Source: Blastocystis sp. Blastoise (lineage: Eukaryota > Protista > Bigyra: Opalinata). Taken from it: a DNA stretch of 64,000 nt. The DNA lies in contig JBBPEB010000019.1 in assembly GCA_039096225.1 (NCBI GenBank), positions 310,001-374,000 on the forward strand. The letters run 5' to 3'. A program made the translations under genes and the position numbers. This document shows, piece after piece, positions 11,811 to 23,780 of this stretch. The notes beneath the pieces were generated by a model. It did not search any database, was not told where the DNA came from, and saw only the letters and a list, made by a program, of their open reading frames with translations. The first letter of the stretch is position 1. Each line of letters begins with the position of its first letter.

Positions 11811-11827
11811 ACTAAAAACCGTTCTTC

Positions 11828-12037
11828 GAGAAATTGACTATCGGTGTGTTTCCACTACTTTTTGCTGTTAACCTGATACTGCATTGTATTGGCTAATTTC
11901 TTCATTATCCAATAATATTACATTTGTCTTTTTTATGAAGAGTTATTAATTTATCATATGTTAGTAGTTCTATAAGAATAAGCGTCAATTAAAGCTATTC
12001 TTTCATTGGATGCTACAGAGCATAATCAAACTACAAT
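11828..12037 (+). repeat. Left TIR of the Mutator-like element
   Basis: Reverse complement of 23092-23301. Confidence 0.95.
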
Positions 12038-13203
12038 CATTATATACTCATGAAATAAAAAATATATAATAAATATAAAAATATAATTTTTTATGATATA
12101 TAACCTATAGTTGATTTTTAAATATTTAAAAAATATATTTTATGACTTTCTTTAAATACTCTATATAGTTGTTTTTTTATATTTTCATTAAAACTATAAA
12201 ATTAGCATTAAACTGAAGCATTATTATATAAATAATTGTAAACATGACTTGATAGAAGTATAAAAGCGTTTTATAGCAATTATATTACAAAAATACTAAC
12301 TATTTAACTACTTTCATTATAATGCACTGTAATTCCGTTATTTATTTATATTTTCGAGCTATTTTTGAGTACATAAATGTATAGCGTTTAATACATAGTA
12401 ATTTGTTATAAGTGAACAATTATTTAAAGAAATGAAAGAGTAATGTACACATTTATATTAATAACAGAGATTCAACTTGAAACTGATATCCTGTACTATT
12501 CATCACTATCTACAGTTTATGAATGAATTACAAAAGAAAAAACGAATGTTACAATTAATTAATTGTTAATGCATTGAAGTATAATTATATTTTATAACAA
12601 AATCAAAGAGATAAACACCTTAAATAAATAAATAAATAATATATAAGTTTTAAAATAAGATATTAAAGATAATATTTAGAATCTTTATTTAAAGTATAGA
12701 TTCAATGATTAAATAATCTAAAACTGATAATAATAGTATTTTAAGTGAAATACAGCTAGAAATAATAAAATATATTTAGAATGAATGGAATGAATACTCT
12801 TAAAGTATTATAAAACAATTCTAAAGATATCCTATTGCAATCTAGATGATAATAGAAACGCATGATTATAAAATTATGCTTTTAATATAATATTAAGATT
12901 ATAAAATTAAGATGTGTTGATTTTTTGTCTAATAAATTATTATATCAATTACCTAACACTTCAAAAGTATGCAGAAGGATCATTAGCATCCTTAATTAAT
13001 CCAGAATTGAGTAAATGAAAATATAAGCTAATGCAATTGTAATGTTGTGTCTACTTCATTTTGATAAAATATTAATATCACTTTTAAGTAGATAGCCTAT
13101 AGATATAACTCATGAGTGAATATCAACGTATAATATTGAAATATGACTGAAATAATACAAATTCTAACAAAGAAAAAAAAATCTTAAAAAATCTTTAAAA
13201 AAA

Positions 13204-13270
13204 TACTTAAGTCAGGATTTGAACCTGAAGATTGTCTAGAATGACCCTCTCTTGCCATTCAAGCTTAAGT
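13204..13270 (-). tRNA. tRNA-like element or pseudo-tRNA (anticodon not assignable)
   Basis: Minus strand reads ACTTAAG-CTTG AATGG CAAG-AGAGGGTC ATTCTA GACAATCT-TCAGG TTCAAAT CCTGA-CTTAAGT-A: perfect 7-bp acceptor stem, perfect T arm with B-box GGTTCAAATCC, followed at once by T7 (Pol III terminator). D-arm linker and anticodon arm are non-canonical. Confidence 0.55.
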
Positions 13271-13329
13271 AAAGGTGATATACTGCATAAATATATATAT
13301 TATTTAAAATAACAACAATAAATATTACA

Positions 13330-19728: not shown

Positions 19729-19863
19729 CTATATATTATATATATTATAATTATATTAAGTATTGTTATTAGTAGAAGAATTATAATATAATTATAATTT
19801 TGAGTAGTACTTATATTATAAACAGAATTAATGATATATATAAAACATCTTTAAAGCACTTGT

Positions 19864-20583
19864 ATAATAATAATAATAATAATAATAATAATAATAATAA
19901 TAATAATAATAATAATAATAATAATAATAATAATAATAATAATAATAATAATAATAATAATAATAATAATAATAATAATAATAATAATAATAATAATAAT
20001 AATAATCATAATAATAATAATAATAATCATAATAATAATCATAATAATAATCATAATAATCATAATAATAATAATCATAATAATAATAATAATAATCATA
20101 ATAATCATAATAATCATAATAATAATCATAATAATCATAATAATAATCATAATAATAATAATAATAATAATAATAATAATAATAATAATAATAATAATAA
20201 TAATAATAATAATAATAATAATAATAATAATAATAATAATAATAAATATAATAAATATAATAAATATAATAATAATAATAATAATAATAATAATAATAAT
20301 AATAATAATAATAATCATAATAATCATAATAATAATCATAATAATAATCATAATAATCATAATAATAATCATAATAATACTAATAATCATAATAATAATA
20401 ATAATAATAATAATAATAATAATAATAATAATAGTAATGATAATAATAATAATAATAATAATAATAATAATAATAATAATAATAATAATAATAATAATCA
20501 TAATAATAATAATAATAATAATACAAATAATAATAATAATAATAATAATTATAATAATAATAATAATAATAATAATAATAATA
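19864..20583. repeat. Compound (AAT)n/(AATCAT) microsatellite
   Basis: Direct observation; lies in intron-like sequence just upstream of the first captured aminopeptidase exon. Confidence 0.95.
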
Positions 20584-23091
20584 CTGTAAATTGAAGTAAA
20601 ATTATGAAGAATTCCTCAAGAGATTGTAATTTATATTGTAGCTTAAGGATTTCGAACTAATACTATAAGAAAAAGAATAAAAACAATTTATAGAAAAACT
20701 ACTATCATAAATGAGGAAAGACTAGTATATAATGAAGTAGATGAATAATTATTAGAACTAAAAGATTTATAAAAATGGAAGTAAGACAATATAAAAGTGT
20801 TATGCTACTCAATAGATATAATAGAAAGATCTAAGAATATCATTACAATATACTATAGTAAAGAAAGTAAGAAGATATATAAAAGATAAACACATATAAT
20901 CTTATAATATGCTGTTAGAGAAAAATAAAAATAGACAAATATATATATAAGAAAATATTAATTATATAAATACTAAGAGAATATTTTATGATTAAAACTA
21001 AAATAAATATGTCATACAAACATATATGAAAATAAAAGGATGAATAATAGAATAATAAAGTCAAGATAATCTGAGATTATAACTCAATTTGTAAAAGAAG
21101 AAACTAATAATAGAAAAGAGAATGTATATGAAATAAAGCAATAATTCAGGATGATGTAATATAAACACAAAAGTATATATATAAAAGAATAGATTCATCA
21201 AAATAGATAGAGAACATGGTATAAAATATAAATAAAAAATGACTCATGTTTTAAGAAGAAAAAAAATCGTTAAAGAAAAATATAGAATAACAAGACCATA
21301 GAATGTAAATATATATATATATATAAACATATTTGAATAATTTTAGACAAAAAATAATGAATTAGGAAGGTATAATAATATTATAATAATAAGTTAAATT
21401 TTACGAATGACGTTAAAGAGTACATAATACACCATAAAAAAGAACATGAAAAGTAGTAGATAATTCATAGAATAAGAAGATTTGAGGATATTTAATTGTT
21501 CAAAGAAGACCATATATTATAAAGATAGTTTTATATGGATGAAAATTATAGGATTACAATATAATTAAATTAATCCAACATCAATAAAACAACGAATAAA
21601 TAGTTCACACGGTAATAACATAAAGAGATACACTATAAAAAAATTTATAAAAAAATCTTATAGATTATTTGGATTAAAACTAAGCAAATCAAATAAAATA
21701 TTATATATTATATATTTGTATAATAAATAATAAAAAAATAACAGCAAAAATGTATATATTTAAACAAAATTGTAAAAAATAATTATATAAAACATAATAC
21801 AGAATAAGTTCATAATAAAAATATTAGTTAATAAAGACTTGATATTAAAAAAAGTAAATGATAATATTAACAAAAAGAAAGTAGATAATATTATAAAAAT
21901 AAAAGGATATGTATCAAAATATACGAATAGAGAAAAAGGAATCATAAAGTTGGAGAAAATGAAAATGCATATGGTTCACTATGAATATCTATATAAATAT
22001 AAATAATTATTCTAAAATATAGTATATTAAATAATAAAAGATTATATAATAAAAATAATGTAATTTATACATTATAAGTATGCATATATAATAACAGTAA
22101 TAGAATGAAATATATTATAAATATATATATATTCATGTTATATAAGAGAATATAATTGAATTATTATAAAAATATTATTAAAAAAAGGAATAATTGAATA
22201 GAAAAGTAATAAATATATTTTTAATTGAAATATAAATACAAAAAAACTCAATCTATATGTATATAAATAATAGCTAAAAAGAATTTGAAAAATAAATATA
22301 ATAAGTAATAACGAAAACAATAATAGAGAAGAATAAGAATATTTATAAAAATCAATAAGTAGAAAAATATACAAATGATTTCAATGCCAACTTGAAAGAC
22401 AGTATATTGGTATCTATTGAGGACTGAGATACTATATAGATTAAGAATAGACGATTGAGAAACAATAATAAACATATATAAACAATAAAAATAAAAACTG
22501 AAGCAATGCTAACATAAAGATAGTTGTATTTCATTAAAACACAATTCATAGAGTAACATGCATTCCGTAGTTAGTATTCGAACAAGAATTAGCATCCAAC
22601 AACAAAAGTAACGCAATTAAGAAATGAAGTCAAACACTCTGAATGATGAAAACAATAATAAATAACTTCGATCAATTAGACTCATCATAAACAAATTTCA
22701 TAATGTACCTAGTATCAATAAATAACTGAGTAATAGAATTTTATCAATATCTTGACTTTAATGTAAAGAATTTATAATATTAGTCTCGATTTATCAATTA
22801 TCGTGAAAATATAAAGAAAAACTTTTTTTTAATATTTATGATTTCTCTTTATTTAATATTCATTAGAAAATATGTTTAGTGACTAGCTATACTTTGTTGT
22901 TACGTTAAAGAACTTTAAGCAATAATAGTTAAGTGATGCAATGGGAAACAACTCATTTTGTGATTTGTTGATATTTTATGTCTAGTCCAATATTATTCAT
23001 ACAACTTAAATAGTATACTGATAGTATATCATATCAAAAGAGTCTGTCTCTCGTTATTTTTTGTGAATCAAGTTGTTTTTGTTAATAAATT

Positions 23092-23301
23092 ATTGTAGTT
23101 TGATTATGCTCTGTAGCATCCAATGAAAGAATAGCTTTAATTGACGCTTATTCTTATAGAACTACTAACATATGATAAATAAATAACTCTTCATAAAAAA
23201 GACAAATGTAATATTATTGGATAATGAAGAAATTAGCCAATATAATGCAGTATCAGGTTAACAGCAAAAAGTAGTGGAAACACACCGATAGTCAATTTCT
23301 C
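23092..23301 (-). repeat. Right TIR of the Mutator-like element
   Basis: Reverse complement of 11828-12037. Confidence 0.95.
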
Positions 23302-23780
23302 CCGTTCTTCAAGTTTTAATTTTTTATGAATTCTTGTATTTATTTTATTTTTGAATTATTTTATATGTTTTAATTTTATTTTTGATATTTCTTTAATTTA
23401 AATTACAAAGCAAATCATTAGCTATGAACTTTAAGATTCTAGAGTCTAAATGAAATGAAGAAAATGTCATCATTTTGTCATTTTCATGCTTTCTTTATTC
23501 ATATTAAGTTGTTCTATTTCATAAATCTAGAAATGATTTGTAAAATCATATATAAGAAATATGAATGAGTTATAACATCATTCTTTCCTTAATTATTTGT
23601 TAAGAGAGTCATTTTCTTGACAATACAGGATCCTTCTATGAAGAGAATAAGTTTGTTCATATAAAAAGTACATAGTTAATATAAGGATAACTAGTAAAAA
23701 AATTCAAATTGTTGAATGACGCTATTCAGTACTAACATAACAATAAAAATTAGTCTTCGAATATATATATATATATATAT

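What the first reader, a model, noticed from the sequence alone, without database searches (positions are those of the whole stretch)
11819..23310. 11.5-kb Pack-MULE in a protist: Mutator-like TIRs and a 9-bp TSD enclosing fragments of several host genes
Seen: 210-bp near-identical TIRs starting GAGAAATTG, an exact 9-bp TSD (ccgttcttc) on both sides, no recognisable transposase, and internal intron-retaining gene pieces all on the minus strand. Established: long TIRs with a terminal G and 9-bp TSDs define Mutator-like elements (maize Mu ends begin GAGATAATTG), and gene-capturing Pack-MULEs are described mainly from plants and are usually a few kb. Inference: an unusually large gene-capturing MULE in a microbial eukaryote. 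It is inserted about 230 bp upstream of the TLDc start, matching Mutator's preference for gene 5' regions.
Basis: partly seen in the sequence, partly recalled or inferred. Interest (0 to 1): 0.88.

Follow-up and report, generated by a model that had tools for sequence, protein, structure and literature searches.

The report
Gene-fragment-carrying Mutator-like transposon in Blastocystis
An 11.5-kb defective cut-and-paste transposon in a tortoise-gut Blastocystis carries broken pieces of two host genes, apparently copied second-hand from a larger Mutator transposon, a behaviour known mainly from plants but otherwise ordinary.

Summary
The two ends at 11828-12041 and 23088-23301 are 214-nt inverted repeats with 3 mismatches, flanked by an exact 9-bp duplication (ccgttcttc). 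No transposase lies inside. The element sits 220 bp upstream of a TLDc gene.

The Pack-MULE reading is largely supported, with a correction.
- **End family.** A profile search finds this end type in ours, in three 4.6-5.1-kb non-coding elements (one with a verified 9-bp duplication) and in one solo fragment. No member encodes a transposase.
- **Cargo source.** Cargo 12032-19926 has 3% substitutions (94.8% BLAST identity) against the left part of a 43.3-kb element on contig C5. That element has 2.5-kb inverted ends, its own 9-bp duplication, and Mutator-type transposase and Ulp1 exons.
- **Host genes.** Both elements carry the same frameshifted internal fragments of an ATR-like kinase gene (parent on C29) and an M1 aminopeptidase gene (apparently intact parent on C17).
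- **Junctions.** One junction is a 6-10-bp microhomology inside the C5-type end. The other is a (TAA)n tract in an aminopeptidase intron.

So the cargo was most likely copied from another Mutator element, not from the host genes directly. Reads, RNA and empty sites could not be tested. This scan has already found similar gene-carrying transposons elsewhere in this genome.

The parts
11819..11827 (.). Left target-site duplication, ccgttcttc
   Evidence: Identical to 23302-23310
11828..12041 (+). Left terminal inverted repeat (TIR-W). It starts GAGAAATTGAC. Reliable pairing ends at 12037.
   Evidence: Homologous to the TIRs of three C22-type elements.
12032..14379 (.). Cargo block A. It corresponds to positions 114-2513 of the 2.5-kb terminal repeat of the C5 MULE-Ulp1 element (1.5% substitutions). 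It holds an 88-aa ORF (14086-14349, minus strand) of unknown origin.
14380..14882 (.). AT-rich continuation of the block shared with C5
14883..17462 (-). Cargo block B: internal, intron-containing, frameshifted fragment of an ATR-like PIKK gene. The parent lies at C29:659208-662103. A 313-bp deletion is shared with the C5 copy.
17437..19875 (-). Cargo block C: internal fragment of an M1 aminopeptidase gene (Peptidase_M1 profile positions 78-213 and part of ERAP1_C). It lacks the N domain, the HELAH exon and the last exon, and holds stops and frameshifts. The parent lies at C17:636879-641636.
19863..20583 (.). (TAA)n microsatellite of about 720 bp. The block shared with C5 and C17 ends here.
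20584..23087 (.). Block D: A-rich non-coding sequence with no true relative in the genome
23088..23301 (-). Right terminal inverted repeat (TIR-W)
23302..23310 (.). Right target-site duplication, ccgttcttc

Best explanation
This is a single-copy, non-autonomous, Mutator-like (Pack-MULE-type) DNA transposon of 11,474 bp in Blastocystis sp. 'Blastoise', a tortoise isolate. A trans-acting transposase cut it out and pasted it into the 5' region of a TLDc gene, making a 9-bp target duplication. These points are shown: the TIRs, the TSD and a small family of homologous TIRs that also make 9-bp TSDs. Its cargo is second-hand. A 7.9-kb block was copied from a C5-type MULE-Ulp1 element that already carried fragments of an ATR-like kinase gene and an M1 aminopeptidase gene. 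The direction of copying is inferred. The block starts at position 114 inside the C5-type terminal repeat, and an independent diverged C5-type end keeps homology across that point. The copying step most likely used microhomology. This could have been template switching during double-strand-gap repair after excision, or end joining after aberrant excision of neighbouring insertions. One junction is the shared hexamer TACAAT (10 bp with one mismatch). The other lies in a TAA microsatellite within an aminopeptidase intron. The gene fragments are decaying pseudogene pieces with no sign of function. The mobilising transposase is unidentified.
For: TIRs and TSD. TIR family: a profile search finds ours, three pairs with identical termini (C2, 4.6 kb; C22, 5.1 kb; C25, 4.6 kb) and one solo fragment (termini). 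The TIR-W to C22 alignment scores 177 against shuffles at 126 +/- 7. The C22 copy has a verified 9-bp TSD, TTATAATAT. The genome holds at least 28 MULE-domain hits and no Merlin DDE domain. C5 element: 2513-bp arms at 99.96%, TSD aactactgg, 43,346 bp. Its transposase exon gives concordant weak MULE, Transposase_mut and SWIM hits. That exon is 43% identical (E 8e-70) to Blastocystis proteins carrying PF00872, PF10551 and Peptidase_C48. A Ulp1 exon is present. Shared cargo: window 12032-19926 matches C5 with 3.0% substitutions. The 313-bp and 11-bp deletions are shared against C29. Three-way unique substitutions are 43, 47 and 58. Direction and junctions. Parents: C17 has the full M1_N, M1 and ERAP1_C series. 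C29 has HEAT_ATR and PI3_PI4_kinase. Decay: stops and frame changes. Literature: MULE TSDs are 8-11 bp, TIRs are often hundreds of bp, and MULEs occur in stramenopiles (PMC6446971).
Against: No element with this TIR type encodes a transposase in the assembly. The MULE assignment is therefore indirect. TIR-W and the C5 terminus are not alignable beyond 9 of the first 11 bases, and that 11-mer pattern is not enriched genome-wide. The element is single-copy, so only one transposition event is documented. Block D and the origin of block A are unexplained. Block A is less diverged from C5 (1.5%) than blocks B and C (3.6-4.1%), which a single copying event does not predict.
Confidence: 0.72

Rival explanations
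1. The hybrid formed from two neighbouring insertions. Two TIR-W-type elements inserted into a C5-type MULE, one in its terminal repeat and one about 7.9 kb further in. Aberrant excision then deleted their facing halves, leaving one element that encloses the intervening DNA. This is the mechanism proposed for Pack-CACTA elements in Arabidopsis. It differs from the best explanation only in the capture step.
For: The right half ((TAA)n plus AT-rich DNA plus TIR) resembles the AT-microsatellite interior of the C22-type relatives. The junctions show microhomology compatible with end joining. The mechanism is described in PMC13317346.
Against: No TIR-W-type insertion exists today in the C5 element or near it. 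Block D shows no homology to the C22 interior. The C5 copy has only a few TAA units at the breakpoint.
Confidence: 0.25
2. It is a non-autonomous element of another superfamily that also makes 8-9-bp duplications (Merlin, Foldback-like, hAT-like or P-like), not a MULE.
For: No cognate transposase is linked to this TIR family. TSD length alone does not identify the superfamily.
Against: No Merlin-type DDE domain was found in the genome. TIRs of 200 bp or more with 9-bp TSDs are typical of MULEs (PMC6446971). A proven 9-bp-TSD element with a MULE transposase in the same genome starts with 9 of the same first 11 bases and shares 7.9 kb of interior.
Confidence: 0.06
3. It is a plain internal-deletion derivative of the C5-type MULE-Ulp1 element.
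For: It shares 7.9 kb with the left part of that element at 3% substitutions.
Against: The outer 204 bp of TIR-W and the outer 113 bp of the C5 arm are not alignable (score 72 against shuffles at 69 +/- 4.7). TIR-W is instead homologous to the C22-type TIRs. The right 3.2 kb has no counterpart in C5.
Confidence: 0.04
4. It is not a transposon: a segmental duplication, an assembly artefact or a chance inverted repeat.
For: The element is single-copy and no reads could be laid on it.
Against: A 214-nt 99% inverted repeat is bounded by an exact direct 9-mer (chance about 3.5e-7). The interior is a mosaic of three unlinked loci. The related TIR family has its own TSDs.
Confidence: 0.02

Closest known systems
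Pack-MULEs of rice, maize and Arabidopsis (Jiang et al. 2004, as cited in PMC6446971 and PMC13317346)
   Same: No transposase, long TIRs and a 9-bp TSD. The element carries intron-containing fragments of several unlinked host genes in one element. The fragments are mostly pseudogenic. It is inserted close to the 5' end of a gene.
   Different: The host is a stramenopile gut protist. It is single-copy. The cargo is shared with, and most likely copied from, an autonomous-type MULE rather than taken directly from the genes. No cognate autonomous element was identified.
The 43.3-kb MULE-Ulp1 element at C5:260641-303986 of the same genome, which resembles the Kaonashi/KI-MULE type
   Same: 9-bp TSD, 9 of the first 11 terminal bases, and 7.9 kb of interior that includes the same PIKK and aminopeptidase fragments with the same 313-bp deletion.
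   Different: The C5 element has 2.5-kb TIRs, transposase and Ulp1 exons and a VPS13 fragment. Its terminal 113 bp are unrelated to TIR-W.
C22-type non-coding elements of the same genome (C2:788476-793114, C22:260198-265346, C25:970870-975459)
   Same: Homologous TIRs: the same first 13 bases and conserved blocks such as TATTGGCTAATT and GTTCTATAAGAA. A 9-bp TSD was verified for C22. None carries a transposase.
   Different: Their TIRs are about 65% identical to TIR-W. The part of the C22 copy's interior that could be read, about 70% of the element, is mostly 2-3% G+C microsatellite with no gene fragments. There are three copies with identical termini.
Hybrid Pack-CACTA formation in Arabidopsis (reviewed in PMC13317346)
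   Same: A Pack-type element created by joining transposon ends around foreign DNA.
   Different: A different superfamily. Here the enclosed DNA comes from another transposon, and no tandem-insertion intermediate is seen.

Membership tests
Mutator-like elements (MULE superfamily) | Target-site duplication of 8-11 bp, typically 9 | tested here: met
   Exact 9-bp direct repeat, ccgttcttc. The criterion comes from PMC6446971.
Mutator-like elements (MULE superfamily) | Long terminal inverted repeats, commonly hundreds of bp | tested here: met
   214 nt with 3 mismatches
Mutator-like elements (MULE superfamily) | A MuDR/MULE-type DDE transposase in the element or in an autonomous relative with the same TIRs | tested here: inconclusive
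   None inside the element. None of the 9 TIR-family sites lies near a MULE transposase hit. A MULE-transposase element (C5) shares the interior and 9 of 11 terminal bases, but not the TIR.
Mutator-like elements (MULE superfamily) | Several family members at different sites, each with its own TSD | tested here: met
   Four TIR pairs and one solo fragment. The C22 TSD, TTATAATAT, differs from ours. The TSDs of the C2 and C25 copies could not be read.
Pack-MULE | Non-autonomous: no transposase between the TIRs | tested here: met
Pack-MULE | Carries fragments of host genes whose parental copies lie elsewhere | tested here: met
   M1 aminopeptidase parent at C17, with the full domain series. ATR-like PIKK parent at C29, with HEAT_ATR and the kinase domain.
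Pack-MULE | Capture at the DNA level, with introns retained | tested here: met
   Homology to C17 and C29 runs through introns
Pack-MULE | Fragments acquired by this element directly from the host loci | tested here: not met
   The same fragments with the same deletions sit in the C5 MULE. The shared block begins inside the C5-type terminal repeat.
Merlin (IS1016-like) transposons | A DDE_Tnp_IS1595-type transposase present in the genome | tested here: not met
   No match to PF12762 in G000
Deletion derivative of the C5 MULE-Ulp1 element | Same terminal sequence as the parent element | tested here: not met
   The termini are not alignable beyond the first 11 bases

The most novel reading that the evidence does not exclude
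Blastocystis MULEs may form a relay network in which blocks of captured host exons pass from autonomous to non-autonomous elements of unrelated TIR types. The relayed fragments would then be used, for example as sources of antisense or small RNA against the parental ATR-like kinase and aminopeptidase genes, or as a new upstream control region for the TLDc gene 220 bp away.
Probability: 0.07. Interest if true: 0.7.

Novelty: new member of a known kind. Interest (0 to 1): 0.45.

Why it matters
Gene-fragment capture by Mutator-like elements is documented almost entirely in plants. This is a cleanly resolved case in a stramenopile gut protist, with both parental genes, the intermediate carrier element and both capture junctions identified. 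It shows that host-exon shuffling by cut-and-paste transposons goes on in Blastocystis. The published genome paper reports transposable elements there only as a bulk fraction of 5.6-7.5% of the genome (PMC12129017). The case also shows that cargo can move from one transposon family to another, with junctions at a microhomology and at a microsatellite. That bears on the still unsettled mechanism of transduplication. It does not reveal a new class of element or a new function.

Tried and rejected
- **Reads.** No read support, empty-site allele or RNA evidence was obtained, and I did not try another route.
- **Genome letters.** I could not read the C2 and C25 elements, the left end of the C22 element, the C6 fragment, or the termini of the PF10551-positive MULEs. 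The TIRs of the autonomous MULE families were therefore not compared with TIR-W.
- **Terminal 11-mer.** GAGAANTNGAC as a family signature is rejected: 190 sites against 184 in the control. Only the exact form GAGAAATTGAC forms close inverted pairs.
- **Dispersed repeat in block D.** Rejected. The roughly 70% matches to many loci are overlapping low-complexity alignments.
- **Native interior.** Block D shows no homology to the C22 interior.
- **RNA genes.** No tRNA and no Rfam family was found in 10500-24500.
- **Word-based protein searches.** The search for homologous proteins found nothing with the C5 transposase exon or with a cargo ORF. Its length filter means these blanks say little.
- **Public gene calls.** The look-up of encoding contigs had no record for the flanking TLDc protein, so public gene calls inside the element were not seen.
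- **Linked duplication with C29.** A TLDc paralogue lies about 3.6 kb from the end of the captured PIKK segment on C29. I rejected a linked duplication. Orientation and identity do not fit (71-77% against 95%), and the family has at least 47 paralogues.
- **Spliced models.** Exons were searched one by one, by reference.
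Full report
**Observation.** The repeat finder reports one long inverted repeat in the region. Its arms are 11828-12041 and 23088-23301, 214 nt long and 99% complementary. A direct comparison gives three mismatches, at arm positions 59, 121 and 211. Both arms begin GAGAAATTGAC. The nine bases outside each arm are the same direct repeat, ccgttcttc. At the window's base composition, that 9-mer would recur at a fixed place with a probability of about 3.5e-7. 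Because the flanks are direct rather than inverted, this is a target-site duplication and not an inverted segmental duplication. The element is 11,474 bp long.

**Host.** The flanking gene product is 100% identical to WA158_000088 of Blastocystis sp. Blastoise. The assembly has 33.34 Mb in 34 contigs at about 21% G+C. This fits the Russian-tortoise isolate Rus-B, reported as 33 scaffolds, 33.3 Mb and 23.1% G+C (PMC12129017). That paper reports transposable elements only as 5.6-7.5% of the genome.

**Copy number and family of the ends.** BLAST with the whole TIR, and a 26-nt terminal pattern allowing three mismatches, find only this pair in the genome. The exact 11-mer GAGAAATTGAC does, however, occur as four close inverted pairs:
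- ours;
- C2:788476-793114;
- C22:260198-265346;
- C25:970870-975459.

I held one arm of the C22 element. It aligns to TIR-W with a score of 177, against 126 +/- 7 for shuffles, and shares blocks such as TATTGGCTAATT, TTTATCATATG and GTTCTATAAGAA. A sequence-only profile of these arms (R1) finds exactly these eight arms in the genome, one solo fragment at C6:98058-98169, and nothing else convincing. The three C22-type pairs have identical termini. The C22 copy is flanked by TTATAATAT on both sides. The part of the C22 interior that I could read is mostly 2-3% G+C, with no ORFs. So TIR-W belongs to a small family of non-coding, 9-bp-TSD elements. Ours is the only diverged member and the only one seen to carry genes. 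No family member lies near any MULE-transposase hit.

**Cargo.** On the minus strand, Pfam recognises Peptidase_M1 (profile positions 128-212) and ERAP1_C in three stop-free segments. A genome-wide Peptidase_M1 search adds a further exon (profile 78-122) that now holds two stop codons.

The whole stretch 12032-19926 matches C5:260754-268691, with 94.8% BLAST identity and 3.0% substitutions. Within it:
- 14883-17462 is also 93-95% identical to C29:659208-662103;
- 17437-19875 is 76-88% identical to C17:638727-641319.

The rest of the interior is a 720-bp (TAA)n tract (19863-20583) and 2.5 kb of A-rich sequence with no true relative.

**Parental genes.** C17 carries a complete series of M1 aminopeptidase exons on one strand. 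These cover Peptidase_M1_N, Peptidase_M1 positions 16-218 (including the HELAH exon) and ERAP1_C positions 1-317. The cargo copy lacks the N domain, the HELAH exon and the last exon. Its counterpart of a 193-codon parental exon is split over three reading frames.

C29 carries, on the minus strand, a HEAT_ATR exon and PI3_PI4_kinase exons just downstream of the captured segment. The cargo copy of a 355-codon parental ORF is also split over three frames and has a 313-bp deletion. Homology runs through the introns, so capture was at the DNA level.

**The C5 locus is itself a transposon.** The C5 match begins inside a 2513-bp inverted repeat at 99.96% identity (C5:260641-263153 and C5:301474-303986). 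The arms start GAGAACTCGAC and are flanked on both sides by aactactgg. The 43,346-bp element contains the following:
- A 327-codon exon with concordant weak hits, in the right order, to the end of the MULE domain, to Transposase_mut and to SWIM. This exon is 43% identical (E 8e-70) to annotated Blastocystis sp. Blastoise proteins. Those proteins carry Transposase_mut and Peptidase_C48 above Pfam's thresholds, and the MULE domain at or just below its threshold.
- A Ulp1 (Peptidase_C48) exon and a VPS13 fragment.

It is inserted 82 bp upstream of an Rpb7-like gene. This is a Mutator element of the Ulp1-carrying kind, as earlier notes of this scan had proposed for this genome.

**Relationship and direction.** The window element and the C5 element share blocks A, B and C, and share 313-bp and 11-bp deletions relative to C29. 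In the PIKK block, substitutions unique to each sequence number 43 (window), 47 (C5) and 58 (C29). The two transposon copies therefore separated soon after the fragment left C29.

TIR-W (204 bp) and the outer 113 bp of the C5 arm are not alignable (72 against 69 +/- 4.7 for shuffles). They agree only in 9 of the first 11 bases, and that 11-mer pattern is not enriched in the genome.

The shared block starts at position 114 of the C5 arm. An independent, 77%-identical C5-type end at C5:170.7 kb keeps homology from position 18 to 239, straight across that point. The sequence beyond position 114 is therefore native to C5-type ends. The block most likely moved from a C5-type element into a TIR-W element, and not the reverse. 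This is an inference.

**Junctions.**
- *Left junction.* The two TIR-W arms pair perfectly up to 12037. The C5 homology starts at 12032. The shared hexamer is TACAAT, or 10 bp with one mismatch.
- *Right junction.* The window, C5 and C17 sequences part at a short TAA-type tract in the intron just downstream of the HELAH exon. In the window this tract has grown to 720 bp.

Both junctions fit copying or joining guided by microhomology. The data do not separate two routes: template switching during gap repair, or the neighbouring-insertion route described for Pack-CACTA elements (PMC13317346).

**Superfamily.** MULEs are defined by 8-11-bp TSDs, TIRs often hundreds of bp long and a MuDR-type transposase, and they occur in stramenopiles (PMC6446971). 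The first two features are met. The third is not shown for this TIR family. In support, the genome has at least 28 MULE-domain hits in several families, a second family of MULE-Ulp1 transposases and no Merlin-type DDE domain. I therefore file the element as Mutator-like with moderate-to-high confidence, not as proven.

**Context.** The element lies in the short space between the 5' end of a TLDc gene and the 3' end of a TAF11-like gene. The TLDc gene has its ATG at 11599 and its TLDc domain in the exon at 9844-10131. A 142-bp G+C-rich foldback MITE (11656-11797) lies 21 bp to the left of the TSD and has at least 41 other copies.

**What could not be done.**
- As a result, read support, an empty site, expression and the termini of the autonomous MULEs are untested.

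**Verdict.** The Pack-MULE reading is right in kind, but the cargo is second-hand and the cognate transposase is unknown. This is a new member of a known kind in an unusual host. The scan has already found similar gene-carrying transposons elsewhere in this genome.

Noticed in passing
window 11656-11797: A 142-bp G+C-rich foldback MITE lies 21 bp left of the element's TSD. Its ends read CAGCATTCGCC ... GGCGAACCCTG, it folds at -48.7 to -55.2 kcal/mol (z -3.4 and -2.7), and it has an imperfect TSD of about 10 bp. At least 41 other copies exist at 73-97% identity. One of them (C6:97909-98048) lies 10 bp from the solo TIR-W-family fragment at C6:98058-98169. Two such adjacencies seem unlikely by chance.
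   Followed up: partly
G000 C5:260641-303986 (L003, L051, L024, L050, L025, L004): A 43.3-kb MULE-Ulp1 element has 2513-bp TIRs (99.96%) and the TSD aactactgg, and is inserted 82 bp upstream of an Rpb7-like gene. Besides the shared block, it carries a VPS13_VAB fragment (C5:298792-299250) and an internal 4.3-kb inverted repeat at 90% identity (C5:274964-279197 and C5:286914-291166). Parts in and beside that repeat are 82-97% identical to C29:650001-651575.
   Followed up: partly
window 14086-14349 (minus strand), C5:262860-263123 and C5:301504-301767: An 88-codon ORF in block A is 100% identical at the protein level in the window and in both C5 arms, although block A differs by 1.5%. It has no Pfam match. 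Degenerate copies with 8-9 TAA stops lie at C16:2202, C3:420936 and C34:910124.
   Followed up: partly
window 9841-11599 (minus strand) and genome-wide: The flanking TLDc gene (WA158_000088, 501 aa) belongs to a family of at least 47 paralogues of about 500 aa, 32-53% identical, spread over many contigs of this genome. All carry PF07534.
   Followed up: no
P0001 (KAK8795504.1) and P0003 (KAK8803205.1): Two near-identical annotated 1497- and 1499-aa proteins join the MULE/Transposase_mut and Ulp1 domains to a C-terminal Cse1 (exportin) segment (67.9 bits for P0001). This looks like another host fragment fused to a MULE-Ulp1 protein.
   Followed up: no
G000 C2:788476-793114, C22:260198-265346, C25:970870-975459: Three elements of 4.6-5.1 kb have identical termini. 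The readable part of the C22 interior is mostly 2-3% G+C microsatellite. Recently active non-coding elements made almost wholly of TAA-type repeats are odd passengers for a cut-and-paste system.
   Followed up: partly
G000 C22:1238292-1240281: A second locus has HEAT_ATR and strong PI3_PI4_kinase hits, so the genome has two ATR-like genes. The C29 one, which donated the fragment, is the weaker match.
   Followed up: no
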